Under the pieces are notes generated by a model. The model was given only the letters and a program-made list of their open reading frames with translations. It was not told the origin of the DNA and made no database searches. This document shows, piece by piece, positions 1-52,200 of a stretch of 64,000 nt of DNA; position 1 is the stretch's first letter; the number at the start of each line of letters is the position of its first letter. Origin of the DNA: Ranitomeya imitator (Eukaryota); contig NC_091291.1 in assembly GCF_032444005.1 (NCBI RefSeq), forward strand, positions 141,174,001 to 141,238,000. The letters run 5' to 3'. The position numbers were made by a program, and so were the translations under genes.

Positions 1-175
1 AGGGTAAGGGAAGGAGAGAGGAGAGGATGGAAGGGGCAGGGAATGATGGAAGAGAGGATGGAAGGCTCAGGAAAGGATGGAGAGGACAGAAGGGTCAAAG
101 AAGGAGAGAGGAGAGGACGGAAGGGTCAGGGAAGGATGGAGGAGAGGACAGATGGAGAAGGAGGGAGGAGGATAG
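1..175. repeat. Polypurine (GA-rich) low-complexity tract
   Basis: AGGGAAGGAGAGGAGAGG-type sequence, almost devoid of pyrimidines. Confidence 0.85.
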
Positions 176-825: not shown

Positions 826-3800
826 GGCACATCCCTATACCTCCCATACAGCCGTCACCGCACAGATCTGTCACCTATAGCTCCCATACAGCCGTCACCC
901 ACCACACAGCACAGATGTCACCTATACCTCCCATACAGCCGTCACCACACAGCACAGATCTGTCACCTATACCTCCCATACAGCCGTTACCACAGATCTG
1001 TCACCTATACCTCCCATACAGCCGTCACCGCACAGATCTGTCACCTATAGCTCCCATACAGCCGTCACCCACCACACAGCACAGATGTCACCTATACCTC
1101 CCATACAGCCGTCACCACACAGCACAGATCTGTCACCTATACCTCCCATACAGCCGTTACCACAGATCTGTCACCTATACCTCCCATACAGCCGTCACCG
1201 CACAGATCTGTCACCTATAGCTCCCATACAGCCGTCACCCACCACACAGCACAGATGTCACCTATACCTCCCATACAGCCGTCACCACACAGCACAGATC
1301 TGTCACCTATAGCTCCCATACAGCCGTTACCACAGATCTGTCACCTATACCTCCCATACAGCCGTCACCACACAGCACAGATCTGTCACCTATACCTCCC
1401 ATACAGCCGTTACCACACAGCACAGATCTGTCACCTATAGCTCCCATACAGCCGTCACCACACAGCACAGATCTGTCACCTATAGCTCCCATACAGCCGT
1501 CACCACACAGGACAGATCTGTCACCTATACCTCCCATACAGCCGTTACCACACAGCACAGATCTGTCACCTATAGCTCCCATACAGCCGTCACCACACAG
1601 CACAGATCTGTCACCTATAGCTCCCATACAGCCGTCACCACACAGGACAGATCTGTCACCTATACCTCCCATACAGCCGTCACAGCACAGCACAGATCTG
1701 TCACCTATAGCTCCCATACAGCCATCACAGCACAGCACAGATCTGCCACCTATACCTCCCATACAGCCGTCACCACACAGCACAGATCTGTCACCTATAC
1801 CTCCCATACAGCCGTCACCACACAGCACAGATCTGTCACCTATACCTCCCATACAGCCGTTACCACACAGATCTGTCACCTATACCTCCCATACAGCCGT
1901 CACCGCACAGATCTGTCACCTATAGCTCCCATACAGCCGTCACCACACAGCACAGATCTGTCACCTATAGCTCCCATACAGCCGTCACCACACAGCACAG
2001 ATCTGTCACCTATAGCTCCCATACAGCCGTCACCCACCACACAGCACAGATGTCACCTATACCTCCCATACAGCCGTCACCACACAGCACAGATCTGTCA
2101 CCTATACCTCCCATACAGCCGTTACCACAGATCTGTCACCTATACCTCCCATACAGCCGTCACCGCACAGATCTGTCACCTATAGCTCCCATACAGCCGT
2201 CACCCACCACACAGCACAGATGTCACCTATACCTCCCATACAGCCGTCACCACACAGCACAGATCTGTCACCTATACCTCCCATACAGCCGTTACCACAC
2301 AGCACAGATCTGTCACCTATAGCTCCCATACAGCCGTCACCACACAGCACAGATCTGTCACCTATAGCTCCCATACAGCCGTCACCACACAGGACAGATC
2401 TGTCACCTATACCTCCCATACAGCCGTCACAGCACAGCACAGATCTGTCACCTATAGCTCCCATACAGCCATCACAGCACAGATCTGCCACCTATACCTC
2501 CCATACAGCCGTCACCACACAGCACAGCTCTGTCACCTATAGCTCCCATACAGCCGTTACCACACAGATCTGTCACCTATACCTCCCATACAGCCGTCAC
2601 CGCACAGATCTGTCACCTATAGCTCCCATACAGCCGTCACCACACAGCACAGATCTGTCACCTATAGCTCCCATACAGCCGTCACCACACAGCACAGATC
2701 TGTCACCTATAGCTCCCATACAGCCGTCACCCACCACACAGCACAGATGTCACCTATACCTCCCATACAGCCGTCACCACACAGCACAGATCTGTCACCT
2801 ATACCTCCCATACAGCCGTCACCGCACAGATCTGTCACCTATAGCTCCCATACAGCCGTCACCACACAGCACAGATCTGTCACCTATACCTCCCATACAG
2901 CCGTCACCACACAGCACAGATCTGTCACCTATAGCTCCCATACAGCTGTCACAGCACAGCACAGATCTGTCATCTATACCTCCCATACAGCCATCACAGC
3001 ACAGCACAGATCTGCCATCTATACCTCCCATATAGCCGTCACCGCACAGCACAGATCTGTCACCTATACCTCCCATACAGCCGTCACCACACAGCACAGA
3101 TCTGTCACCTATACCTCCCATACAGCCGTCACCACACAGCACAGATCTGTCACCTATACCTCCCATACAGCCGTCACCACACAGCACAGATCTGTCACCT
3201 ATACCTTCCATACAGCCGTCACCACACAGCACAGATCTGTCACCTATAGCTCCCATACAGCTGTCACCACACAGATCTGTCACCTATACCTCCCATACAA
3301 ACGTCACAGCACAGATATGTCACCTATAGCTCCCATACAGCCGTCACCGCACAGCACAGATCTGTCACCTATACCTCCCATACAGCCGTCACAGCACAGC
3401 ACAGATCTGTCACCTATACCTCCCATACAGCCGTCACCACACAGCACAGATCTGTCACCTATACCTCCCATACAGCCGTCACCACACAGCATAGATCTGT
3501 CACCTATACCTCCCATACAGCCGCCACCGCACCGCACAGATCTGTCACCTATACCGCCCATACAGCCGCCAACGCACCGCACAGATCTGTCACCTATACC
3601 TCCCATACAGCTGTCACCACACAGCACAGATCTGTCACCTATACCTCTCATACAAACGTCACAGCACAGATCTGTCACCTATAGCTCCCATACAGACGTC
3701 ACAGCACAGATCTGTCACCTATAGCTCCCATACAGCCGTCACCGCACAGCACAGATCTGTCACCTATAGCTCCCATACAGCCGTCACCGCACAGCACAGA

Positions 3801-4620
3801 TCTGTCACCTATACCTTCCATACAGACGTCACGGCACAGATCTGTCACCTATACCTCCCATACAGCAGTCACGGCACCTCACAGATCTGCCACCTATAGC
3901 TCCCATACAGCCGTCACCGCACAGATCTGTCACCTATACCGCCCATACAGCCGTCACGGCACCTCACAGATCTGTCACCTATACCTCCCATACAGCCGTC
4001 ACCGCACTGCACAGATCTGTCACCTATACCTCCCATACAGACGTCACAGCACAGATCTGTCACCTATACTGCCCATACAGCCGTCACCACACAGCACAGA
4101 TCTGTCACCTATAGCTCCCATACAGACGTCACAGCACAGATCTGTCACCTATACTGCCCATACAGCCGTCACCACACAGCACAGATCTGTCACCTATAGC
4201 TCCCATACAGCCGTCACCACACAGATCTGTTACCTATACCTCCCATATAACCGTCACCACACAGCACAGATCTGCCACCTATACCGCCCATACAGCCGTC
4301 ACCACACAGCACAGATCTGCCACCTATACAGCCGTCACCACACAGCACAGATCTGTCACCTATAGCTCCCATACAGCCGTCACCACACAGCACAGATCTG
4401 TCACCTATACCGCCCATACAGCCGTCACCGCACCTCACAGATCTGCCACCTATACCTCCCATACAGGTATATATGTCACAGCACAGCACAGATCTGTCAC
4501 CTATACCGCCCATACAGCCGTCACCGCACTGCACAGATCCATCACCTATACCTCCCATACAGGTATATATATCACCGCACAGATCAGTCACCTATACAGG
4601 TATATATAGCACCGCATAAA
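826..4620. repeat. 45/40-bp minisatellite in ACAD8 intron 7 (~85 units)
   Basis: Unit CAGATCTGTCACCTATA(C/G)CTCCCATACAGCCGTCACC(ACACAG)CA; 170-bp higher-order period at 915/1085/1255 and 2050/2220. Confidence 0.97.
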
Positions 4621-4635
4621 TCTGCCGGCTCTCAC

Positions 4636-7600
4636 CTATGTTTATCCTCCCTCCATTCAGTCCTTTCATTGCAATCAGGAATCCTTGGCCTTCCTCACCG
4701 AGCCGGTTTGATACGGGGACGACACAATCCTCAAATATCACCGCTCTTGTTGGCTGCGAGTTCCACCCAACCTGCAGCAGAAATCATTGCGGGGTCACAA
4801 AGGAGAAGACCGGAAACACTCAGCTTTCTGCAGATCCTGAATGGCCTATAAATCAGTACAGGTATACATACCTCCACACATCCAATCCAATGCAGGTCTC
4901 TACACAGCAATTGGCAGGCCACTCAGGGACGTCACCCAGCTTTCTACAGATCCTGAATGGCAGATTTAACTTGCAAAAAGAGGGGTGACAACACTGTCCG
5001 TGCTGCGCTCAGCAGATTGGATGATTATGGGCGAGTGCCGTGAGGCTGTGCAGGTGATTGCACGGTCACACACTAACAGTATCAGTACCAGGTCACACTC
5101 CCTTATTTTGCACACAGATCCGATTTGCCTCCTCACCTTTTTTTCTTTCTTTCCAAAGCTGAGCCCCGGTGTCCCCTTCTCCACCACCAGGCAGGAGATG
5201 CCCCGCGATCCGCTGCCCCCCGTCCTGCACATCACTAGGTACACATCTGTGTCTCCTCCACCGCTGATGAAAGCCTGGAGGATGAAGACGGGAGTGACAA
5301 CGAGCTGCACCCTACAACATTCATGTTACAGCTGAACATCACTCAAATCCTGACACCTGGAGTGGAAACCGTCCTCCTCCTCCCCAGAGGCCGGGAAGCT
5401 GAGATACGAGGCGCTGTTTGTATGGTGAACCATAGATTTACCAGTGATGACAAATGCCAACAGCCCCACATATCTCAGCTTCCCGAGTCCCTACCGGACA
5501 GATCTGTGGTCACATCCAGCACCTTGGATCCATTCAGGAGGTAGTGATCGCCGTCCCGCTTTGCAGATGTCAGCAGAGACGCTGCGTCACTTCCACTGCC
5601 TGGGAATAGCCAGAGAGGAGCGTATCAGTAACATGTCCTCCCGAGGAGGTATACGGTATATACACTGCGATCAGTACTCACCTGGCTCCGTCAGACAGTA
5701 AGACGCAAACTTCTCCATGCTGCAGAGCGCGGGGCAGAGCCGATGCCGCTGATCATCGTTCCCAAACGTGTCGATCATCCAAACACACATACTGAGGGGG
5801 GAGCAGACCATGAACGTGAGCGTCACAGACCACCCGTACAGAGACTGTGAAGGGTTAAACTAAACTAAAGGGCTTAATTTTGTGCTTTTCGAATCCATCT
5901 TGCTGTTTTGAGATAAATTCTGTTACTGGGCTAAAGTTCACAGCTGTTATGAGACCTTGATTGTTTCAGCCTGAACAAGATATGACACTGAGGGTGTATT
6001 GTTCTACGAGACCTTGTCGTACAAGCTGTTCCTGCATTCTTATAGGTTAATAACTGTGAGCGTGTTCTTATGTTGATTGGTTGAAGCATAACTTGTTAAG
6101 ATTATGAAAAGTGTGACACAATAAACGGGGGTCAGAGATCTGCTCGATCCTCCCAAACAGAGACACAGAGACATACGTCTCCGTCTGGTCATTTTCAGTT
6201 GCCTGCAAAACGCCCTGTGGATCAATTTGAAAATCGCTGAGTCAACCGTGAAGGGTCACTTCAGATCCTCCCCCAACAAGACCCCCCTGTACCACATGTC
6301 ACTGCCCCTGCATCAATAGGACGACAGGTGCCGGATTAGAGGAGATGCCGGATTAGAGAAGATTCCGGATTATCAGGGCGGTCATAGAGAAGTATCCAGA
6401 GCTCACTGGTCAGGGAAGAGAGACTCCAGGAAGGAAATATCTAAGGAGGGATCGCCCGAGGCCGCAAAGATGACTTCTGTTCCCCCTGCAAACGCTCCCA
6501 GCAGCCCGGACCCCATCATCACACATGGGGGGCACAGGCTAGAACAGCCAGATTACAGGAGGGAAGAGGAAGATTATTATTATCGTCCCGAAATTAACGA
6601 GGACGTCCAGCAACGGTCTGATGTGTCATCTACTACAACATTGATTTAAGAAGCTTTTGGGGCATTTTATGTTTTTGTTTCTGCTTCGTACTAGTCGTTT
6701 ACAGACAGATGAAATGTGCACAATACGCAGAAACGTCCGGGGTCCCACGGCACATTCATGGGGGGCTATATTTTTTCAGTCCCATCGTCCCTCCCGTATG
6801 AAGGCCGTCCCCATTTTCCCCTGGTGTATACCATTCAGCCACATTGCCCCCACGGGTACAACATCCGACCCCTAGCCACCCAATCTGTAATACATCCGGG
6901 TCCTCACTGCTGGTGTATAACCTCCGGCCCCTCACATCTCCCCTCCAGTGTATAGCCTCGGCCCCTCACACCCCCCCTCCAGTGTATAGCCTCGGCCCCT
7001 CACACCCCCCCTCCAGTGTATAGCCTCGGCCCCTCACATCCCCCCTCCAGTGTATAGCCTCGGCCCCTCACACCCCCCCTCCAGTGTATAGCCTCCGGCC
7101 CCTCACACCCCCCCCCTCCAGTGTATAGCCTCCGGCCCCTCACACCCCCCCTCCAGTGTATAGCATCCGGCCCCCCACACCCCCCTTCCAGTGTATATCC
7201 TCCGGCCCCTCACACCCCCCCTCCAGTGTATATCCTCCGGCCCCTCACACCCCCCCTCCAGTGTATATCCTCCAGCCCCTCACATCCTCCCTCCAGTGTA
7301 TATCCTCCGGCCCCTCTCACCCTCCCTCCAGTGTATATCCTCCGGCCCCTCACCCCCCCCCCTCCAGTGTATATCCTCCGGCCCCTCACATCCCCCCTCC
7401 AGTGTATATCCTCCGACCCCTCACATCCCCCCTCCAGTGTATATCCTCCGGCCCCTCACATCCCCCCTCCAGTGTATATCCTCCGGCCCCTCACATCCCC
7501 CCTCCAGTGTATAGCCTCCGACCCCTCACACCCCCCCCTCCAGTGTACAGCCTCCGACCCCTCACCCCCCCTCCAGTGTATAGCCTCCACCCCTCACACA

Positions 7601-10600
7601 CCCCCTCCAGTGTATAGCCTCCACCCCTCACACCCCCTCCAGTGAATAGCCTCCGGCCCCTCACACCCCCCCTCCAGTGTATAGCCTCCACCCCTCACAC
7701 CCCCCCTCCAGTGTATAGCCTCCACCCCTCACACCCCCTCCAGTGTATAGCCTCTGGCCCCTCACACCCCCCCTTCAGTGTATAGCCTCCACCCCTCACA
7801 CCCCCCTCCAGTGTATAGCCTCCGGCCCCTCACACCCCCTCCAGTGCATAGCCTCCCAACCCCCCCCACACCTCCCCCTTCAGTGTATAGCCTTCAGCCC
7901 CTCACACCCCCCCTCCAGTGTATATCCTCTGACCCCTCACACCCCCCCTCCAGTGTATATCCTCCGGCCCCTCACACCCCCCCTCCAGTGTATAGCCTCC
8001 CACCCCTCCCCCTCCAGTGTATAGCCTCCACCCCTCACACACCCCCTCCAGTGTATAGCCTCCACCCCTCACACCCCCTCCAGTGTATAGCCTCCACCCC
8101 TCACACCCCCCCTCCAGTGTATAGCCTCCACCCCTCACACCCCCTCCAGTGTATAGCCTCCACCCCTCACACCCCCCCTCTAGTGTATAGCCTCCACCCC
8201 TCACACCCCCTCCAGTGTATAGCCTCTGGCCCCTCACACCCCCCCTTCAGTGTATAGCCTCCACCCCTCACATCCCCCTCCAGTGTATAGCCTCCGGCCC
8301 CTCACACCCCCTCCAGTGCATAGCCTCCCACCCCTCACACCTCCCCCTTCAGTGTATAGCCTCCAGCCCCTCACACCCCCCCTCCAGTGTATATCCTCTG
8401 ACCCCTCACACCCCCCCTCCAGTGTATATCCTCCGGCCCCTCACACCCCCCCTCCAGTGTATAGCCTCCTCCCCCTCCAGTGTATAGCCTCCGGCCCCTC
8501 ACCCCCCCCCCTCCAGTGTATATCCTCCGGCCCCTCACATCCCCCCTCCAGTGTATATCCTCTGGCCCCTCACATCCCCCCTCCAGTGTATAGCCTCCGG
8601 CCCCTCACACCCCCCCTCCAGTGTATAGCCTCCACCCCTCACATCCCCCCACCAGTGTATAGCCTCCACCCCTCACACCCCCTCCAGTGTATATCCTCCG
8701 GCCCCTCACACCCCCCCCCCTCACACAATTGCATATGGTGTAGAACTGTAGATGCAGGACAGAGAAGCCCTGGTGATGTAAAGTGGAGGGGGCACATACT
8801 TTTCTGTACATAGTGTATACAGACATTACACATTGGAGCCCATATAGTGCAATCTCCTGTGCAGGATGCAACGTGATCTATGCAGGGGTGCGGGGCGCGG
8901 CATGGTCCATGTCGGGGTGCGGGGTGAGGGTCGTCACGTGGCCCATGGGGGGGCACAGCGCAGTCTGCGGGGGAGCACATTGATGCGATCCATGGGTTGG
9001 TGCTGGTCGTCGCATGGTCTGTGGGGTTGCAGTGCAGTCTGTGGGGCGGTGCGGGTCGTTGTGCGGTCCGTGGGGCGGTGCGGGTCATTGTGCGGTCCGT
9101 GGGGCGGTGCGGGTCATTGTGCGGTCCGTGGGGCGGTGCCGGTCGTTGTGCGGTCCGTGGGGCGGTGCGGGTCGTTGTGTGCTCCTTGGGGCGGTGCGGG
9201 TCATTGTGCGGTCCGTGGGGCGGTGCGGGTCGTTGTGCGGTCCGTGGGGCGGTGCGGGTCGTTGTGCGGTCCGTGGGGCAGGGCGGTGCGGGTCGTTGTG
9301 CGGTCCGTGGGGCGGTGCCGGTCGTTGTGCGGTCTGTGGGGCGGTGCGGGTCGTTGTGCGGTCCGTGGGGCGGTGCGGGTCGTTGTGCGGTCCGTGGGGC
9401 GGTGCGGGTCATTGTGCGGTCCGTGGGGCAGGGCGGTGCGGGTCGTTGTGCGGTCCGTGGGGCAGGGCGGGTCGTTGTGCGGTCCGTGGGGCGGTGCGGG
9501 TCGTTGTGCGGTCCGTGGGGCGGTGCGGGTCGTTGTGCGGTCCGTGGGGCGGTGCGGGTCGTTGTGCGGTCCGTGGGGCGGTGCCGGTCGTTGTGCGGTC
9601 CGTGGGGCGGTGCGGGTCGTTGTGCGGTCCGTGGGGCGGTGCCGGTCGTTGTGCGGTCTGTGGGGCGGTGCGGGTCGTTGTGCGGTGCCGGTCGTTGTGC
9701 GGTCTGTGGGGCGGTGCGGGTCGTTGTGCGGTCCGTGGGGCGGTGCGGGTCGTTGTGCGGTGCCGGTCGTTGTGCGGTCTGTGGGGCGGTGCGGGTCGTT
9801 GTGCGGTCCGTGGGGCGGTGCGGGTCGTTGTGCGGTCCGTGGGGCGGTGCGGGTCGTTGTGCGGTCCGTGGGGCGGTGCGGGTCGTTGTGCGGTCCGTGG
9901 GGCGGTGCGGGTCGTTGTGCGGTCCGTGGGGCGGTGCCGGTCGTTGTGCGGTCTGTGGGGCGGTGCGGGTCGTTGTGCGGTGCCGGTCGTTGTGCGGTCT
10001 GTGGGGCGGTGCGGGTCGTTGTGCGGTCCGTGGGGCGGTGCGGGTCGTTGTGCGGTGCCGGTCGTTGTGCGGTCTGTGGGGCGGTGCGGGTCGTTGTGCG
10101 GTCCGTGGGGCGGTGCGGGTCGTTGTGCGGTCCGTGGGGCGGTGCGGGTCGTTGTGCGGTCCGTGGGGCGGTGCGGGTCGTTGTGCGGTCCGTGGGGCGG
10201 TGCGGGTCGTTGTGCGGTCCGTGGGGCGGTGCGGGTCGTTGTGCGGTCCGTGGGGCGGTGCCGGTCGTTGTGCGGTCCGTGGGGCGGTGCGGGTCGTTGT
10301 GCGGTGCCGGTCGTTGTGCGGTCTGTGGGGCGGTGCGGGTCGTTGTGCGGTCCGTGGGGCGGTGCGGGTCGTTGTGCGGTCCGTGGGGCGGTGCGGGTCG
10401 TTGTGCGGTCCGTGGGGCGGTGCGGGTCGTTGTGCGGTCCGTGGGGCGGTGCGGGTCGTTGTGCGGTCCGTGGGGCGGTGCGGGTCGTTGTGCGGTCCGT
10501 GGGGCGGTGCGGGTCGTTGTGCGGTCCGTGGGGCGGTGCGGGTCGTTGTGCGGTCCGTGGGGCGGTGCGGGTCGTTGTGCGGTCCGTGGGGCAGTGCGGG

Positions 10601-11461
10601 TCGTTGTGCGGTCCGTGGGGCGGTGTGGGTCGTTGTGCTGGCGGTGCCCCCTACTTGTGGATGCTCATGTACGCCGTGGTGCTGACGCATCCTGTAGCCA
10701 GCGCCTCGAATATGATGGAGGTGTCCAGACGAGACAGGCCCGATCCTCCCACGTCTGGACGGGTGTAGATCCCACCGAAGCCGAGCTGTGCCGCCCTCCG
10801 CATGGTCTCCACGGGGAACATCTCCTGTGTGCGGAGGAGGAGGAGGAGATATCGGTCACATTGCAGGATTAGCGCCGCCGCTGTGCGCAGGGAGTGTGCG
10901 GTACTGCAGCTCAGCCCCACATGTCACCACACACATCCCCGGCGGAGCTTCCCCCTCACACGCTCCTTCCTCACCTTCTCATCCCACAGCGCCATGTTTG
11001 GAGACATCTCTTTGGAGGCAAAGTTGAAGGCCACTTTCTGAAACTCCTTCTGCTCCTCACTCAGCCCAATGGAGGCTGCAAAACACGGGAATCACAACAC
11101 CTGCAGCAGAACTACAACTCCCAGCATGCCCTTTTTATAATATCACACCTAGAATTAGTTGCCAAGGGCAACCCCAGTCCTGATAGCGGTTTCCATTCTA
11201 ACCAATCAGAATACAGCATCTTAGTCACATGACAACCCTTGCTCTCTCAGAAGCCGTCATGTGACCTTTCCTGCAGCCGATGAATGACATAAGTCACGTG
11301 TACACCATATTCCCGTTCGCTCCGCCCACTAATTGTTAACCCTTCGTGTCCTTACGATCTACAGCTGAAGCCGTCCCTCTGCCGGGAGCTGCGCTCATCC
11401 CGCTGAGAACATTTCTGAGAGACCGAGAGAGCAGAGATCCGAGCCTGACCCCGAGGGCCAT
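4636..11461 (-). CDS. ACAD8: Isobutyryl-CoA dehydrogenase, mitochondrial; 5' partial (exons 1-7; the remaining exons, 8-11 in human, lie left of position 1)
   Basis: Coding exons (minus strand): 11461-11356, 11075-10975, 10824-10655, 5791-5682, 5599-5523, 5274-5137, 4771-4636; all GT-AG with continuous phase. Translation: [21 protein letters not shown] (Arg-rich, acid-free presequence)...[20 protein letters not shown]...[36 protein letters not shown]...[18 protein letters not shown]...LNGSKAFISGGG...[25 protein letters not shown]...GLNGGRINI, matching recalled vertebrate ACAD8. Confidence 0.97.
5846..6278 (+). mobile_element. Solo LTR (ERV1/Gypsy-type), antisense to ACAD8, in intron 3
   Basis: Starts TGTGAAGGG, ends CCCCAACA; 4-bp target-site duplication AGAC at 5842-5845 and 6279-6282; ATTGG at 6076 and AATAAA at 6120-6125; AT-richer than its flanks. 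Confidence 0.8.
6912..8720. repeat. ~32-34-bp C-rich minisatellite in ACAD8 intron 3
   Basis: Unit CCGGCCCCTCACAC(C)nTCCAGTGTATA(G/T)CCT with a variable C run; G-rich on the ACAD8 sense strand. Confidence 0.97.
9037..10648. repeat. 29-bp CpG-dense minisatellite in ACAD8 intron 3 (~55 units)
   Basis: Unit CGGTGCGGGTCGTTGTGCGGTCCGTGGGG; abuts the exon 3 donor at 10654. Confidence 0.97.
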
Positions 11462-31250: not shown

Positions 31251-34200
31251 ATGGCGGATAAGTCGGCGGTGCTGCTGGAGGCCCTGGACCGGTGCGGGTT
31301 CCGGAGCCTGAGGAAAGGTGAGCCCGACCTGCAATTGTGTAACGTCCAGCGTGACGGCAGCGTGCTACTCATATACAGTGTGCAGCATTATGCTCCAGAG
31401 CTGCACTCACTATGTACATACATTACATTACTGATCCTGAGTTACATCATGTATTATACTCCAGAGCTGCACTCACTATTCTGCTGGTGCAGTCACTGTG
31501 TACATACATTACTGATCCTGAGTTACATCCTGTATTATACCCCAGAGCTGCACTCACTATTCTGCTGGTGCAGTCACTGTGTACATACATTACATTACTG
31601 TTCCTGAGTTACATCCTGTATTATACCCCAGAGCTGCACTCACTATTCTGCTGGTGCAGTCACTGTGTACATACATTACATTACTGATCCTGAGTTACAT
31701 CCTGTATTATACCCCAGAGCTGCACTCACTATTCTGCTGGTGCAGTCACTGTGTACATACATTACATTGCTGATCCTGAGTTACATCCTGTATTATACTC
31801 CAGAGCTGCACTCACTATTCTGCTGGTGCAGTCACTGTGTACATACATTACTGATCCTGAGTTACATCCTGTATTATACTCCAGAGCTGCACTCACTATT
31901 CTGCTGGTGCAATCACTGTGTACATACATTACATTGCTGATCCTGAGTTACATCCTGTATTATACTCCAGAGCTGCACTCACTATTCTGCTGGTGCAGTC
32001 ACTGTGTACACACATTACTGATCCTGAGTTACATCCTGTATTATACCCCAGAGCTGCACTCACTATTCTGCTGGTGCAGTCACTGTGTACATACATTACA
32101 TTGCTGATCCTGAGTTACATCCTGTATTATACTCCAGAGCTGCACTCACTATTCTGCTGGTGCAGTCACTGTGTACATACATTACTGATCCTGAGTTACA
32201 TCCTGTATTATACTCCAGAGCTGCACTCACTATTCTGCTGGTGCAATCACTGTGTACATACATTACATTACTGATCCTGAGTTACATCATGTATTATACT
32301 CCAGAGCTGCACTCACTATTCTGCTGGTGCAGTCACTGTGTACATACATTACATTACTGATCCTGAGTTACATCCTGTATTATACCCCAGAGCTGCACTC
32401 ACTATTCTGCTGGTGCAGTCACTGTGTACATACATTACATTACTGATCCTGAGTTACATCCTGTATTATCCTCCAGAGCTGCACTCACTATTCTGCTGGT
32501 GCAGTCACTGTGTACATACATTACATTACTGATCCTGAGTTACCTCCTGTATTATACCCCAGAGCTGCACTCACTATTCTGCTGGTGCAGTCACTGTGTA
32601 CATACATTACATTACTGATCCTGAGTTACATCCTGTATTATACCCCAGAGCTGCACTCACTATTCTGCTGGTGCAGTCACTGTGTACATACATTACATTA
32701 CTGATCCTGAGTTACATCCTGTATTATACCCCAGAGCTGCACTCACTATTCTGCTGGTGCAGTCACTGTGTACATACATTACATTGCTGATCCTGAGTTA
32801 CATCCTGTATTTTACCCCAGAGCTGCACTCACTATTCTGCTGGTGCAGTCACTGTGTACATACATTACATTGCTGATCCTGAGTTACATCCTGTATTTTA
32901 CCCCAGAGCTGCACTCACTATTCTGCTGGTGCAGTCACTGTGTACATACATTACATTACTGATCCTGAGTTACCTCCTGTATTATACCCCAGAGCTGCAC
33001 TCACTATTCTGCTGGTGCAGTCACTGTGTACATACATTACATTACTGATCCTGAGTTACATCCTGTATTATACCCCAGAGCTGCACTCACTATTCTGCTG
33101 GTGCAGTCACTGTGTACATACATTACATTGCTGATCCTGAGTTACATCCTGTATTTTACCCCAGAGCTGCACTCACTATTCTGCTGGTGCAGTCACTGTG
33201 TACATACATTACATTACTGATCCTGAGTTACATCCTGTATTGTACTCCAGAGCTGCACTCACTATTCTGCTGGTGCAGTCACTGTGTACATACATTACAT
33301 TGCTGATCCTGAGTTACATCCTGTATTTTACCCCAGAGCTGCACTCACTATTCTGCTGGTGCAGTCACTGTGTACATATATTACATTACTGATCCTGAGT
33401 TACATCCTGTATTATACTCTAGAGCTGCACTCACTATTCTGCTGGTGCAGTCACTGTGTACATACATTACATTACTGATCCTGAGTTACATCCTGTATTA
33501 TACCCCAGAGCTGCACTCACTATTCTGCTGGTGCAGTCACTATTCTGCTGGTGCAGTCACTGTGTACATACATTACATTACTGATCCTGAGTTAATCCTG
33601 TATTATACCCCAGAGCTGCACTCACTATTCTGCTGGTGCAGTCACTGTGTACATACATTACATTACTGATCCTGAGTTACATCCTGTATTATACTCCAGA
33701 GCTGCACTCACTATTCTGCTGGTGCAGTCAGTGTGTACATACATTACATTACTGATCCTGAGTTACATCCTGTATTATACCCCAGAGCTGCACTCACTAT
33801 TCTGCTGGTACAGTCACTGTGTACATACATTACATTACTGATCCTGAGTTACATCCTGTATTATACCCCAGAGCTGCACTCACTATTCTGCTGGTACAGT
33901 CACTGTGTACATACATTACATTACTGATCCTGATACTCCAGAGCTGCACTCACTATTCTGCTGGTGCAGTCACTGTGTATATACATTACAGTACTGAGCA
34001 TATATTAGTCCCCGGAGCTGTGCTCACCATTCTTTCATCCTGCATGTACATTACACCGGTGTTTCTTCTCTTGCAGCCTGGGTGGATTCCGTCTGGGACT
34101 TGGACTTCACAGAGTCTGAGCCACTGGACTCCCGTGTGGAGGCTGATATTGTGGAGAACGGGCTGGAGGTGCTGAATTACTTGTATGAGGCTCTTCTGCC

Positions 34201-40200: not shown

Positions 40201-43200
40201 TTCTCTGACTGCCGACCGTGATCCTGAAAATGGTGAAAATTATGTTTTAAGGTTTTAATTGTAATGGTCCCTGTAACCACGACGACTTTAACCCCTTGTA
40301 CCGATCTCTCGGCACAGATCTCGTATCGAGTGTTTGCTCTGGACGTCGCCATCGCTCTGCTGGAGCTGCCGGAGCGGACGCCCGATGCTTCCCTCCCGGT
40401 GGAGAGAATAAAGTTTGTACAGCACAAGTTCCTGCTGCACGCCATGGTGTTCAGCCGCTGCTCCGACAAAGCCCCGACTGTGCGGAGTAAAGCGCTGTCA
40501 TGCCTGGCGCACTGTCTGGAAAAAAACTCCACGACTGTGTCCGAAGGAGTCACCGAGCTGCTGCAAGGAAGTAAGTACACCCGCGTCCTGACTAGTAGTA
40601 ATGTCTGCACCTTCTGCCTGCCTGCTGCTTAATAGAAGAAACTAATCCAGAGTTACATCCTGAATTATACCCCAGAGCTGCACTCACTATTCTGCTGGTG
40701 CAGTCACTGTGTACATACATTACATTACTGATCCTGAGTTACCTCCTGTATTATACCCCAGAGCTGCACTCACTATTCTGCTGGTGCAGTCACTATGTAC
40801 ATACATTACATTACTGATCCTGAGTTACATCCTGTATTATACTCCAGAGCTGCACTCACTATTCTGCTGGTGCAATCACTGTGTACATACATTACATTAC
40901 TGATCCTGAGTTACCTCCTGTATTATATCCCAGAGCTGCACTCACTATTCTGCTGGTGCAGTCACTATGTACATACATTACATTACTGATCCTGAGTTAC
41001 ATCCTGTATTATACTCCAGAGCTGCACTCACTATTCTGCTGGTGCAGTCACTGTGTACATACATTACATTACTGATCCTGAGTTACCTCCTGTATTATAC
41101 CCCAGAGCTGCACTCACTATTCTGCTGGTGCAGTCACTATGTACATACATTACATTACTGATCCTGAGTTACATCCTGTATTATACTCCAGAGCTGCACT
41201 CACTATTCTGCTGGTGCAGTCACTATGTACATACATTACATTACTGATCCTGAGTTACATCCTGTATTATACTCCAGTGCTGCACTCATTATTCTGCTGG
41301 TGCAATCACTGTGTACATACATTACATTACTGATCCTGAGTTACCTCCTGTATTATACTCCAGTGCTGCACTCATTATTCTGCTGGTGCAGTCACTGTGT
41401 ACATACATTACATTACTGATCCTGAGTTACATCCTGTATTATACTCCAGAGCTGCACTCATTATTCTGCTGGTGCAGTCACTGTGTACATACATTACATT
41501 ACTGATCCTGAGTTACATCCTGTATTATACCCCACTCACTATTCTGCTGGTGCAGTCACTGTGTACATACATTACTGATCCTGAGTTACATCCTGTATTA
41601 TACCCCAGAGCAGCACTCACTATTCTGCTGGTGCAGTCACTGTGTACATACATTACATTACTGATCCTGAGTTACATCCTGTATTATACCCCAGAGCTGC
41701 ACTCACTATTCTGCTGGTGCAGTCACTGTGTACATACATTACATTACTGATCCTGAGATACCTCCTGTATTATACTCCAGAGCTGCACTCACTATTCTGC
41801 TGGTGCAGTCACTGTGTACATACATTACATTACTGATCCTGGGTTACATCCTGTATTATACCCCAGAGCTGCACTCACTATTCTGCTGGTGCAGTCACTG
41901 TGTACATACATTACATTACTGATCCTGGGTTACATCCTGTATTATACCCCAGAGCTGCACTCACTATTCTGCTGGTGCAGTCACTGTGTACATACATTAC
42001 ATTACTGATCCTGAGTTACATCCTGTATTATACCCCAGAGCTGCACTCACTATTCTGCTGGTGCAGTCACTGTGCGGTCTGAATGTGTCCCGGTCGGGTC
42101 AGTAGTTTGGGTAAATAAGGGCGGATATGGGGTTTCGCTGCTGGTGCTCGGTGTGATGGCTGCATTTCCTGGATTTGTTCTTGGTCATTTTTTGCCTCTC
42201 ATTTCCCGTTCTCAGGCAGCTGTCGTACAATCTCTGCAGCCGAGGCAGCCACTGAGAGCACGGTGAACGGCACAGAAGGTAAGGGGGGATGTGAGTGGCA
42301 CCGTGGCCGGGTCTGGTGATGGCAGTTGGATGCTCTGTGGCAGGGTCTGGTAGCGTTTTGGCGTGCTGAGGTCTGGTGGGGGCAGTCGCGCGCTCCGTGG
42401 CCAGCTCTGGTGGTGGCGGTCGGATGCGCCGGGTCTGGTGGTGGTGGTCGGATGCGCCGGGTCTGGTGGTGGTGGTCGGATGTGCTGTGGCCAGCTCTGT
42501 TGGTGGCGGTCGGACGTGCTGTGGCTGGGTCTGGTGGTGGCGGTCGGACACACCGGGTCTGGTGGTGGTGGTCGGATGTGCTGTGGCCAGCTCTGTTGGT
42601 GGCGGTCGGATGTGCTGTGGCTGGGTCTGGTGGTGGCGGTCGGATGTGCTGTGGCCAGCTCTGTTGGTGGCGGTCGGACGTGCTGTGGCTGGGTCTGGTG
42701 GTGGCGGTCGGACACACCGGGTCTGGTGGTGGCGGTCGGACGCGCCGCGGCCGGGTCCGTTCATTATCTGCTTATGATATTGCCCCCGGCAGCTTCTACT
42801 CACAGCCGCAAGACCCCTGGTGCCCTGAGGACCATCGAGGTGACGGACGACTGTGACCCCATAGGGACTGATGGTGAGTGGCGCTGGACTCTCGTCCTCC
42901 AGCTGTTGTGAAACTACAACTCCCATCATGCATTGCTACATATTCCCGTGAGGGATCACATGGTCATCTGTGTCCGTTTTCGTACGTGGCAGACACATTT
43001 GTTTTCGTGGCTTTTCCAGGCAGGGACACGCTGGCGATGCTGCGGCTCAGAGCCGGCGACGAGAAGACGAATGTCCGGAAATCCGCACTGCAGGTGAGCG
43101 GTGATCATGGGGAGGATCGGTGATCGGCTGATCTCTCCAGGAATCTTGTGGATCTCCATCTCCCAGATCTTCTCTTCTCCAGGTCCTGGTGAACATCCTG

Positions 43201-49200: not shown

Positions 49201-52200
49201 AGCCGCCTGCACTGATACATTGTAGCAAACTATTGGGGATCGAAGAGCGTTGTTTGGACCAGAAACAGTTGCATCCACTGCAGCCTACAGGATTGCAGTC
49301 TGAATGTTGTCTGCATTCACTGACATCAAGCAGAGACTGTGACTTGGAGTCCCTCATTTACTTCCATCCTGTCTATTAACAATGTTCTATTGACTTTATT
49401 TCCACACGTCCTTCCTCTTGTAGCCACAAGGGGGAGCTCTGGTGTAAATCATCTCCGCATAGAAAGTCCTCCCTCTGCTGGCTGTAGATGGAATTACGCC
49501 ATTGTAGACTTTTTGCTAATTTCTCATGTTTTCCTGTTATAATCTTCCCCTTCTTAGGTCCGACATCTCTTCATCCTGGGAGAAGCGGCTCAGCTTTGTC
49601 CGGCACGTGTCGAGAAAAAAGTCCTCCTCCTGGTTCAGTCCATCTTAGCCTCAGTGTCCCCGGAGCAGAGTGAGCGGTGTCTGTGTATGACATATCCTGC
49701 TGTGGGATAAGGTTCGGGGCTGCAGTAACGTCTACCTCTTACTCCATAGACTCAGGTGACACTGAGCAAGATGGCGCCCCGCTGTCCCAACCGCTGTCCC
49801 AACCGCTGTCCCAGTTCCGAGGGTCTTCTATGCCGCCCCTGATCCGAGCCCACGCCTTCATCACACTCGGTGAGAAAACTGCACATTTGTGTTATAGGTT
49901 ATCATTTATAGGGAAAACCTGCAGGTAATGAAATCACAGCTGGCAGAATAGTGAGTGCAGCTCTGCAGTATAGTACAGGATGTAACTCAGGATCAGTAAT
50001 GTAATGTATGTACACAGTGACTGCACCAGCAGAATAATGAGCGCAGCTCTGGGGTATAATACAGGATGTAACTCGGGATCAGTAATGTAATGTATGTACA
50101 CAGTGACTGCACCAGCAGAATAGTGAGTGCAGCTCTGGGGTATAATACAGTATGTAACTCAGGATCAGTAATGTAATGTATGTACACAGTGACTGCACCA
50201 GCAGAATAGTGAGTGCAGCTCTGGAGTATAATACAGGATGTAACTCAGGATCAGTAATGTATTGTATGTACACAGTGACTGCACCAGCAGAATAGTGAGT
50301 GCAGCTCTGGAGTATAATACAGGGGGTAACTCAGGATCAGTAATGTATGTACACAGTGACTGCACCAGCAGAATAGTGAGTGCAGCTCTGGGGTATAATA
50401 CAGGATGTAACTCTGGATCAGTAATGTATGTACACAGTGACTGCACCAGCAGAATAGTGAGTGCAGCTCTGGGGTATAATACAGGATGTAACTCAGGATC
50501 AGTAATGTAATGTATGTACACAGTGATTGCACCAGCAGAATAGTGAGTGCAGCTCTGGGGTATAATACAGGAGGTAACTCAGGATCAGTAATGTAATGTA
50601 TGTACACAGTGACTGCACCAGCAGAATAGTGAGTGCAGCTCTGGAGTATAATACAGGATGTAACTCAGGATCAGTAATGTAATGTATGTACACAGTGACT
50701 GCACCAGCAGAATAGTGAGTGCAGCTCTGGAGTATAATACAGGATGTAACTCAGGATCAGTTATGTAATGTATGTGCACAGTGACTGCACCAGCAGAATA
50801 GTGAGTGCAGCTCTGGGGTATAATACAGATGTAACTCAGGATCAGTAATGTAATGTATGTACACAGTGACTGCACCAGCAGAATAGCGAGTGCAGCTCTG
50901 GAGTATAATACAGGATGGAACTCAGGATCAGTAATGTATGTACACAGTGAATGCACCAGCAGAATAGTGAGTGCAGCTCTGGAGTATAATACAGGAGGTA
51001 ACTCAGGATCAGTAATGTAATGTATGTACACAGTGACTGCGCCAGCAGAATAGTGAGTACAGCTCTGGAGTATAATACAGGAGGTAACTCAGGATCGGTA
51101 ATGTAATGTATGTACACAGTGACTGCACCAGCAGAATAGTGAGTGCAGCTCTGGGGTATAATACAGGATGTAACTTAGGATCAGTAATGTAATGTATGTA
51201 CACAGTGACTGCACCAGCAGAATAGTGAGTGCAGCTCTGGGGTATAATACAGGATGTAATTCAGGATCAGTAATGTAATGTATGTACACAGTGACTGCGC
51301 CAGCAGAATAGTGAGTACAGCTCTGGAGTATAATACAGGAGGTAACTCAGGATCGGTAATGTAATGTATGTACACAGTGACTGCACCAGCAGAATAGCGA
51401 GTGCAGCTCTGAAGTATAATGCAGGATGTTGCGTATACGCAGTGGCTTTCTCTTGGCTTATTCTATATGTAGACTGTATAAATCCTCGTTCTGCACTTTC
51501 TCCCTCAGGGAAGTTGTGTCTGCAGCACGAGGATCTGGCTAAGAACTGTATTCCCGCTCTGGCTCGAGAGCTGGAAGTATCTAATGACTTGGCCATCCGC
51601 AACAACGTGATCATCGTCATCTGTGACCTGTGTGTTCGGTACACTACGATGGCGGACAGATACATCCCTAATGTGTCCGTGTGTCTCCGGGACAGAGACG
51701 CTTTCATCAGAAAACAGACCCTGATCATGCTGACCAACCTGCTGCAGGTGAGCGGCGCGGACCACCGGCACGGACCAGCGGCGCAGTATTTCCAGTGCCG
51801 CTGAGGTTATTTCTTTCTAGCCATTAGTAATAACAATATAACAAGCTATAGACCACCTGAACAATGCTTAGTGGTCCGCCAGCCCCCCAGGGACGGGGCG
51901 TCCTCACATCCGCTTGTTTCCTCATTGCAGGAGGAGTTTGTGAAGTGGAAAGGGTCGCTGTTCTTCCGCTTCGTCAGTGTCCTGGTGGACCCAGACCCCG
52001 ATATCGCCCAGTAAGTCTCTGTGGAGTCGGGGGGCCGGGCCTCGGCTCTGTGCGGGGACCTTACCCTCCGCTCCCACCTTTCAGGTTCGGGGAGTTTTGC
52101 TTGGTTCATCTTCTCCTGAAAAGAAACCCGGTGATGTTCTCGCAGCATTTCATCGAATGCATCTTCCACTTCACGTCCTACGACAAACACGACAAGTACA

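What the first reader, a model, noticed from the sequence alone, without database searches (positions are those of the whole stretch)
826..4660. 3.8-kb ACAD8 intron 7 array is an amplified copy of the exon 7 / intron 7 junction with the +5G deleted
Junction on the + strand, 4610-4660: CACCGCATAAATCTG-ccggctc-TCACCTAT-gtttat-CCTCCCTCCATTCAG. Repeat unit: CACCGCACAGATCTG-TCACCTAT-a-CCTCC--CATACAG. The unit therefore spans about 25 nt of exon and 25 nt of intron. On the sense strand the true donor is ATAG|GTGAGA, while each of ~85 copies reads ATAG|GTGACA because a 7-nt deletion removes the conserved +5G. Inference: only a splicing-weakened version of the duplicated donor was tolerated and amplified.
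Basis: partly seen in the sequence, partly recalled or inferred. Interest (0 to 1): 0.7.

Follow-up and report, generated by a model that had tools for sequence, protein, structure and literature searches.

The report
Splice-junction minisatellite in frog ACAD8 intron
A 3.8-kb repeat at the start of an ACAD8 intron grew out of the exon/intron boundary and carries 86 weakened copies of the splice signal, while messenger RNA uses only the real one; this kind of repeat is already known from human F7 and from amphioxus.

Summary
The array is real: 86 head-to-tail units of 36-51 nt (mostly 45) fill 826-4635 and run in register up to the donor of ACAD8 exon 7 (minus strand, 4636-4771).

What is firm:
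- The first 36 intron bases are a diverged unit (p<1e-4).
- The register continues 4 nt into the exon, giving ATAG|GTGA.

No copy has +5G: 75 read TAG|GTGACA. A 7-nt indel (4625-4631) separates them from the true TAG|GTGAGA. Whether it was a deletion or an insertion is undetermined.

Spliced contigs from four public runs join exons 4-7. All leave exon 7 exactly at 4636 for exon 8. No pseudo-donor use was seen, but contigs cannot show absence.

The claim that only a weakened donor was tolerated is unsupported:
- Two verified donors of the same gene pair with U1 more weakly than the copies do.
- In human F7, identical pseudo-sites stay silent.

This is a large new member of a known kind: the F7 IVS7, IFI6 and CBS minisatellites, and the amphioxus "mirages".

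The scan already noted the same kind of array in other genes of this genome (ofd1, EMC1, FLVCR1, AK7, WTIP).

The parts
826..4591 (-). Intronic minisatellite of 85 units of 36-51 nt (mostly 45). On the gene strand each unit carries a junction-like ...TATAG|GTGAC... motif.
   Evidence: TRF; unit list; motif search, 80 matches against 0.02 expected
871..2835 (-). The half of the array far from the exon. It is built of multi-unit higher-order repeats (unit strings ABCD, FGH, DGGAB; 170-bp period), which points to recent block duplications.
   Evidence: TRF period 170; unit-type string
3195..4591 (-). The part of the array near the exon. It is made almost entirely of unique unit variants, which are older and not homogenised. 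The units at 4446-4631 share a GGTATATAT motif with the intron start.
4592..4635 (-). First 44 nt of intron 7, which is the first and most diverged unit. Its first 36 nt align to the neighbouring proximal unit with one 7-nt gap.
   Evidence: anchored alignment p<1e-4 under four of five scoring schemes, 1e-4 under the fifth; profile hit 4608-4639
4625..4631 (-). 7-nt segment (gene strand GAGCCGG, intron +5 to +11) that is present only in the true junction. Its absence puts C at +5 in the copies.
   Evidence: alignments
4630..4638 (-). Authentic donor TAG|GTGAGA, used in mRNA.
   Evidence: a loose end exactly at 4636 in spliced contigs of four runs, continuing into letters that translate ASCSLGAAHA
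4586..4594 (-). First pseudo-donor TAG|GTGACT, 44 nt into the intron. Its TAG (4592-4594) is an in-frame stop for any read-through from exon 7.
4636..4771 (-). ACAD8 exon 7 (136 nt, 45 codons plus 1 nt).
   Evidence: PDB search: 42 of 45 residues identical to human ACAD8 214-258, E 2e-22; joints
4636..4660 (-). Only the last 4 nt (4636-4639, ATAG) are firmly in register with the array.
4772..5791 (-). Context: intron 6 (4772-5136), exon 6 (5137-5274), intron 5 (5275-5522), exon 5 (5523-5599), intron 4 (5600-5681) and exon 4 (5682-5791). All introns are GT..AG and all joints were seen in contigs.

Best explanation
This is an intronic minisatellite seeded by a tandem duplication of a short segment spanning the exon 7/intron 7 boundary of ACAD8. 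The segment held at least the last 4 exon bases plus about 36-40 intron bases, and possibly up to 25 exon bases. The downstream copy lay wholly in the intron and was free to diverge. It was then amplified by unequal exchange or replication slippage to 86 units, with the most recent block duplications at the end far from the exon. As a result the intron carries 86 copies of the junction core. 84 of them keep GT and all have C or T instead of G at +5. They are most likely inert by-products. The spliceosome uses the authentic donor, which is both the most upstream and the strongest. Any use of a copy would retain an in-frame TAG and expose the transcript to nonsense-mediated decay.

Shown here: the array and its register across the junction; homology of the intron start to the units; the polarity of homogenisation; use of the authentic donor in RNA.

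Inferred: the duplication event itself, its extent into the exon, its neutrality, and the silence of the copies.
For: - The array and its units.
- The TCACCTAT anchor recurs at 4632, in register, 44 nt after the last unit.
- The first 36 intron bases match the proximal unit at p<1e-4.
- The exon tail including ATAG matches at p 5e-5 to 0.036 against the genomic null.
- A profile of distal units hits 4608-4639, crossing the donor. The hit has E 0.33 over about 119 kb searched, which makes it very unlikely at one pre-specified position.
- Unique unit variants lie beside the exon and higher-order repeats lie distally. Published 'mirage' arrays show the same pattern, with boundary units escaping homogenisation (PMC3087553).
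- The exon is a conserved ACAD8 coding exon, so it must be the source and not the copy.
- Spliced contigs in four runs leave exon 7 exactly at 4636.
- The copies pair with U1 about 3 kcal/mol more weakly than the true donor, and the first pseudo-junction holds an in-frame TAG.
- 43% of the window is minisatellite in 22 arrays, and ACAD8 introns 4-6 are only 82-365 nt. Random short duplications should therefore often span a junction.
- Human precedents exist: F7, IFI6, CBS, LMNB2 and PDGF.
Against: - Exon homology beyond ATAG is not significant on its own (p 0.02-0.6), and the profile alignment does not extend into it.
- Window-wide, the profile hit at the junction is only the third best, at E 0.33. 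Its weight rests on its position and register.
- No outgroup sequence was available, so neither the ancestral state nor the age is known.
- Single-locus status was checked only within 64 kb.
- The RNA evidence comes from assembled contigs, which drop rare isoforms. NMD would hide mis-spliced products further.
Confidence: 0.8

Rival explanations
1. A faithful duplicate of the donor would have caused mis-splicing, so only a copy that had lost +5G through a 7-nt deletion could be tolerated and amplified. The uniform +5C is then the footprint of selection.
For: - 0 of 86 copies have +5G, and U1 pairing is -6.5 against -9.5 kcal/mol.
- Any pseudo-donor use would give a premature stop.
- In human IFI6 and CBS, proximal pseudo-sites identical to the true donor are actually used, so faithful copies can carry a cost.
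Against: - Uniformity is what homogenisation of one founder unit produces with no selection at all.
- Two RNA-verified donors of the same gene are weaker than the copies by the same measure: intron 5 AAG|GTGCTG at -5.3 and intron 3 CAA|GTAGGG at -4.7.
- F7, LMNB2 and PDGF tolerate identical pseudo-sites.
- Three units carry a new GTGAGG site.
- Scan notes report arrays of intact strong donors in ofd1 and EMC1 of this genome (untested here).
- The polarity of the indel is unknown.
Confidence: 0.2
2. An intron-only array. The units were never copied from exon sequence. The array arose inside the intron, for example by slippage between short direct repeats. The 4-nt ATAG continuity and the gapped similarity further into the exon would then be chance or microhomology at the breakpoint.
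For: - Exon similarity beyond ATAG is not significant.
- The profile alignment stops at ATAG.
- Four indels are needed to derive the 40-nt unit from the 61-nt junction.
Against: - A 4-nt exact continuation in register has a chance of about 0.004, and the anchored test including it gives p of 0.036 or less against genomic segments.
- The array starts at intron base +1 exactly.
- The human F7 array has the same anatomy, with the last 4 bp of the exon plus 33 bp of the intron.
Confidence: 0.12
3. A dispersed satellite or a transposon-borne minisatellite that happens to lie beside exon 7.
For: - The window is 43% minisatellite.
- An unrelated 86-bp satellite does occur in three separate arrays in the window.
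Against: - All 80 matches to the unit core lie inside 863-4596.
- The best hits of the unit profile elsewhere in the window are 12-15 nt chance matches.
- The array grades into the intron start and the exon, and the most junction-like units are proximal.
- The only partly fitting contigs listed for the four runs are the mRNA contigs that run on into exons 3 and 8. No listed piece joins array units to foreign flanks.
Confidence: 0.04
4. A functional array. The 84 weak U1-binding sites would act as a U1 snRNP sink or as a splicing or retention regulator for ACAD8 pre-mRNA.
For: - There is a high density of GT-containing junction cores on the transcribed strand.
- Array sequence is present in RNA-type runs X3 and X4.
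Against: - There is no conservation evidence.
- The structure is that of a turning-over VNTR, with sequence differences between individuals at 4530-4542.
- ACAD8 mRNA is spliced normally.
- Arrays of many unrelated sequences fill neighbouring introns.
Confidence: 0.05

Closest known systems
Human F7 intron 7 37-bp VNTR (Borensztajn et al. 2006, PMC1557585)
   Same: - It is an intronic minisatellite that starts at the donor.
- Its first monomer is the last 4 bp of the exon plus the start of the intron, as with ATAG plus the intron start here.
- The donor core is reiterated in every unit.
- Only the most upstream, authentic donor is used.
   Different: - F7 has 5-9 pseudo-sites identical to the true donor. 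ACAD8 has 86 copies that all differ from it at +5 and beyond through a 7-nt indel.
- The F7 sites were shown to be functional by minigene mutagenesis. Nothing was tested at the bench here.
- The organism here is a frog, not a human.
Other human junction-spanning minisatellites listed in PMC1557585: IFI6 (6-16) intron 2, CBS intron 13, LMNB2, PDGF intron 4
   Same: The first monomer spans an exon-intron boundary, and 10-25 reiterated donors lie in the intron.
   Different: - In IFI6 and CBS the two proximal pseudo-sites are used constitutively. No such use was seen here in contigs.
- The copy number here is three to five times larger.
Amphioxus 'mirages' (Adh3 and globin genes; PMC3087553)
   Same: - They are minisatellite-like tandem duplications of exon/intron boundaries.
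- They do not disturb normal splicing.
- They evolve in concert inside the array, while the boundary units escape homogenisation.
- They recur in many genes of one genome.
   Different: - Mirages have few units (3-6 in the globin genes), with unit lengths up to about 160 bp, and can involve either boundary.
- Here there are 86 short units at a donor.

Membership tests
Minisatellite whose first monomer spans an exon-intron boundary (F7 IVS7 type, 'mirage') | A tandem array of 10-100-bp units lying in an intron and directly abutting the exon | tested here: met
   86 units of 36-51 nt at 826-4635; the exon's last base is 4636
Minisatellite whose first monomer spans an exon-intron boundary (F7 IVS7 type, 'mirage') | The array register continues across the junction, so that the first monomer holds exon bases plus the intron start | tested here: met
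   The ATAG|GTGA 8-mer is in register at 4632; the intron's first 36 nt are homologous at p<1e-4; 4 exon nt are firm and a further ~20 nt are inconclusive
Minisatellite whose first monomer spans an exon-intron boundary (F7 IVS7 type, 'mirage') | The donor sequence is reiterated in the units as pseudo-sites | tested here: met
   84 of 86 copies keep TAG|GT. Unlike F7 they are not identical to the true donor: they have +5 C or T instead of G
Minisatellite whose first monomer spans an exon-intron boundary (F7 IVS7 type, 'mirage') | The authentic, most upstream donor is the one used in mRNA | tested here: met
   Spliced contigs of runs X3, X4, X12 and X15 all leave exon 7 at 4636. Absence of pseudo-site use cannot be shown with contigs
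Minisatellite whose first monomer spans an exon-intron boundary (F7 IVS7 type, 'mirage') | Variable copy number between alleles (VNTR) | tested here: inconclusive
   A contig of run X4 differs at five bases in 4530-4542. Copy number could not be measured
Minisatellite whose first monomer spans an exon-intron boundary (F7 IVS7 type, 'mirage') | Local, single-locus origin of the unit | not testable with these tools
   No copy lies elsewhere in the 64-kb window. No whole-genome search was available, and a blank in the scan index means nothing
Dispersed satellite or transposon-borne minisatellite | The same unit occurs at many unrelated loci | tested here: inconclusive
   None in the window. No listed contig piece joins array units to foreign flanks. 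The whole genome was not searched

The most novel reading that the evidence does not exclude
Junction-seeded minisatellites may be systematically over-produced in this frog genome. The scan has flagged the same anatomy in ofd1, EMC1, FLVCR1, AK7, WTIP and now ACAD8. The cause would be a lineage-specific mutational process that favours the 5' splice-site region of transcribed genes. In ACAD8, selection against decoy donors would then have filtered which founder unit could expand. The evidence here does not exclude this, but a neutral account fits equally well: very high minisatellite birth (43% of this window) combined with very short introns.
Probability: 0.1. Interest if true: 0.65.

Novelty: new member of a known kind. 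Interest (0 to 1): 0.3.

Why it matters
It is a natural experiment in 5' splice-site choice. A housekeeping mitochondrial enzyme gene carries 84 GT-containing look-alikes of its own donor, in register, starting 44 nt downstream of the real one, and still splices correctly. Human F7 has identical pseudo-sites. Together the two separate the effect of position (the first site wins) from the effect of site strength.

It also shows how a short intron can grow by kilobases in a frog genome where minisatellites make up much of the gene space. It cautions against reading selection into the uniformity of a homogenised array.

It does not change what is known about ACAD8 or about minisatellite biology.

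Tried and rejected
1. I looked for exon 8 in 1-825 so that real joints across the array could be seen. It is not in the window, so the exon 7-8 junction appears only as a loose end.
2. A free, window-wide profile search with 81 distal units put the junction third, at E 0.33, behind a chance palindrome at about 5493-5508. The distal consensus alone therefore does not prove homology. Position, register and the proximal units do.
3. I looked for intermediate units that keep more of the exon tail. None appears among the 44 distinct unit sequences.
4. I tested for a gradient of unit-to-junction similarity along the array. Only the last 4-5 units stand out, and the rest of the array is flat.
5. Look-ups in the scan index by sequence and by relatives were blank. 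Per the operators this is uninformative.
6. I did not get an outgroup sequence. No tool here reaches other frog genomes without a joined protein model, so I did not build the joined ACAD8 protein and searched exon 7 alone.
7. I did not compute MaxEnt or Shapiro-Senapathy scores, because the matrices are not available offline. I used the U1 5'-end duplex energy instead. The 11-nt U1 sequence came from my own knowledge, and the measure is crude.
8. One paper search failed on a syntax error.

Full report
**What is there**

Tandem Repeats Finder reports a 45-bp unit at 834-4329 with 80.2 copies and 88% matches. It also reports a 170-bp higher-order period, and diverged units continuing to 4582. 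Cutting the region at the 8-mer TCACCTAT and its close variants gives 86 units of 36-51 nt: 53 of 45 nt, 18 of 40 nt, and the rest between 36 and 51 nt. A 17-nt core of the unit has 80 matches in the window, all at 863-4596, where 0.02 are expected.

**The gene**

The gene lies on the minus strand. Bases 4771-4636 translate to 45 residues, of which 42 are identical to residues 214-258 of human ACAD8 (PDB 1RX0, E 2e-22; the next best acyl-CoA dehydrogenase scores 1e-9). Upstream exons at about 11.4 kb, about 11.0 kb, 10655-10810, 5682-5791, 5523-5599 and 5137-5274 make this the seventh coding exon.

The exon ends ATAG at 4636 and the intron starts GTGAGA at 4635. Exon 8 is not in the window.

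**Does the array copy the junction?**

The 8-mer that anchors every unit (gene strand ATAG|GTGA) recurs at 4632-4639. That is 44 nt after the last unit, it is in register, and it is the real exon/intron junction.

*The intron side.* The first 36 intron bases align with the neighbouring proximal unit with one 7-nt gap. No random genomic segment and no shuffle reached that score in 10,000 trials under four of five scoring schemes; under the fifth the genomic p-value was 1e-4. The array therefore begins at intron base +1.

*The exon side.* This is weaker.
- Anchored at the donor, it has p 5e-5 to 0.036 against genomic 25-mers and 0.001 to 0.09 against shuffles, depending on gap costs.
- With the shared ATAG removed, it has p 0.02 to 0.6.
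- A profile HMM of 81 distal units, searched against the rest of the window, aligns to 4608-4639: ATAG, GTGA, a 7-nt insertion, then 18 nt. It stops at ATAG. Window-wide this hit is only third, at E 0.33. At a single pre-specified position it is highly unlikely by chance.

My reading is that a junction-spanning first monomer is well supported, with 4 exon nt plus about 36 intron nt. The further ~20 exon nt are possible but unproven. Because the exon is a conserved coding exon, it must be the source and not the copy.

**Anatomy of the array**

Writing each distinct unit as a letter gives ABCDABCDABEBFGHFGHIJKBLDGGABCDABFGHIMNODGGABDGB... for the part far from the exon. For the last third, beside the exon, almost every letter is unique. 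Recent multi-unit duplications therefore sit distally, and old, unhomogenised units sit at the exon boundary. Only the last four or five units share the GGTATATAT motif of the intron start. Published 'mirage' arrays show the same pattern, with boundary units escaping homogenisation (PMC3087553).

**The donors**

Counts of the 86 pseudo-junctions:

| Sequence | Copies |
|---|---|
| TAG\|GTGACA | 75 |
| TAG\|GTGGCA | 6 |
| GTAACA, GTGATG, GTGACT | 1 each |
| GT lost | 2 |

None has G at +5. The difference from the true TAG|GTGAGA comes from the 7 nt at 4625-4631, which are present only in the true copy.

As a crude strength measure I used the duplex energy with the U1 5' end:

| Donor | Sequence | U1 duplex (kcal/mol) |
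|---|---|---|
| Intron 7, authentic | TAG\|GTGAGA | -9.5 |
| Pseudo-donors (most copies) | TAG\|GTGACA | -6.5 |
| Intron 4 | CAG\|GTGAGT | -13.6 |
| Intron 6 | AAG\|GTGAGG | -10.1 |
| Intron 5 | AAG\|GTGCTG | -5.3 |
| Intron 3 | CAA\|GTAGGG | -4.7 |

The copies are weaker than their parent but lie within the working range of donors in this same gene. Introns 4-6 were seen as joints in RNA contigs, and the intron 3 donor was seen as a loose end at 5791 that runs into exon 3.

Reading from exon 7 into the intron meets TAG at 4592-4594, at the first pseudo-junction. Every pseudo-donor isoform would therefore carry a premature stop.

**RNA**

One run search and one lay of reads were allowed. Four runs (X3, X4, X12, X15; Logan contigs) were laid on 4300-5900.
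- Between them they contain spliced contigs joining exons 4-5-6-7 with GT..AG introns.
- All four have a contig that leaves the stretch exactly at 4636 and continues for more than 250 nt. The first letters of that continuation, after the exon's last G, translate ASCSLGAAHA. From my own knowledge of the family, this is the expected continuation of ACAD8.
- No contig leaves from a pseudo-donor. However, contigs drop rare forms, and NMD would hide such products.
- X3 and X4 also hold array pieces (4355-4466, 4489-4626). One has five base differences at 4530-4542, so the array exists and varies in other samples.

**Mechanism**

The most likely history has three steps.
1. A short tandem duplication spanned the donor.
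2. The downstream copy lay in the intron and diverged, acquiring or inheriting the 7-nt difference.
3. It expanded by unequal exchange or slippage.

The setting makes this unsurprising. 43% of the window is minisatellite, in 22 arrays, and ACAD8 introns 4-6 are 82-365 nt. A random 40-60-nt duplication therefore has a fair chance of including a junction. This last step is inference.

The copies are silent most plausibly because the true donor is upstream and stronger. Experiments on human F7 show that even identical pseudo-sites stay silent for positional reasons (PMC1557585).

**Known relatives and novelty**

[quoted passage not shown] PMC3087553 describes the amphioxus 'mirages'. The ACAD8 array meets the defining features that I could test. 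It is a large new member of this kind, unusual in that all copies differ from the parent donor.

Earlier notes of this scan report the same anatomy in other genes of this genome: ofd1, EMC1, FLVCR1, AK7 and WTIP, plus a related case in ATP4A. One note calls the organism a poison frog, probably Ranitomeya imitator. I did not test those notes or the species name.

**Left out**

Noticed in passing
window 9032-10654: A second ACAD8 intron also starts with an array. The 29-bp minisatellite at 9032-10638 (about 55 copies) begins some 16 nt after the exon 3 donor (CAA|GTAGGG; intron +1 at 10654). Its unit has no GT on the gene strand, so it does not amplify the donor. Intron 3 also holds a 35-bp array at 6913-8717.
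   Followed up: partly
whole window: 43% of the 64 kb (27.4 kb in 22 arrays with units of 22-86 bp) is minisatellite. An 86-bp satellite occurs in three separate arrays: 31402-33997 and 40641-42074 on one strand, and 49943-51429 inverted.
   Followed up: partly
window 5275-5522 and 10654: Two RNA-supported ACAD8 donors are far from consensus: intron 5 AAG|GTGCTG (no +4A, no +5G) and intron 3 CAA|GTAGGG.
   Followed up: partly
window 3845-3889, 3930-3974, 4401-4445: Three units carry a variant (CACCTCACAG on the + strand) that creates a new GTGAGG on the gene strand. This site has +5G but a poor exon side (TCT|).
   Followed up: no
window 4744-5164: Runs X3 and X4 each hold a 423-nt contig covering all of intron 6, at roughly a fifth of the exon depth. 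This may be intron retention, pre-mRNA or DNA carry-over. The contigs have single-G insertions after 4930 and 4958 and substitutions at 5046 and 5073 relative to the window.
   Followed up: no
window 4320-4355 and 4588-4631: The same 9-nt deletion (TATGGGAGG, lying between two TAT repeats on the gene strand) has shortened two separate units to CTGTATAG. This looks like recurrent slippage inside units.
   Followed up: no
window 1-149: A purine-rich 31-bp tandem repeat (about 5 copies) lies at the window start, still inside ACAD8 intron 7.
   Followed up: no
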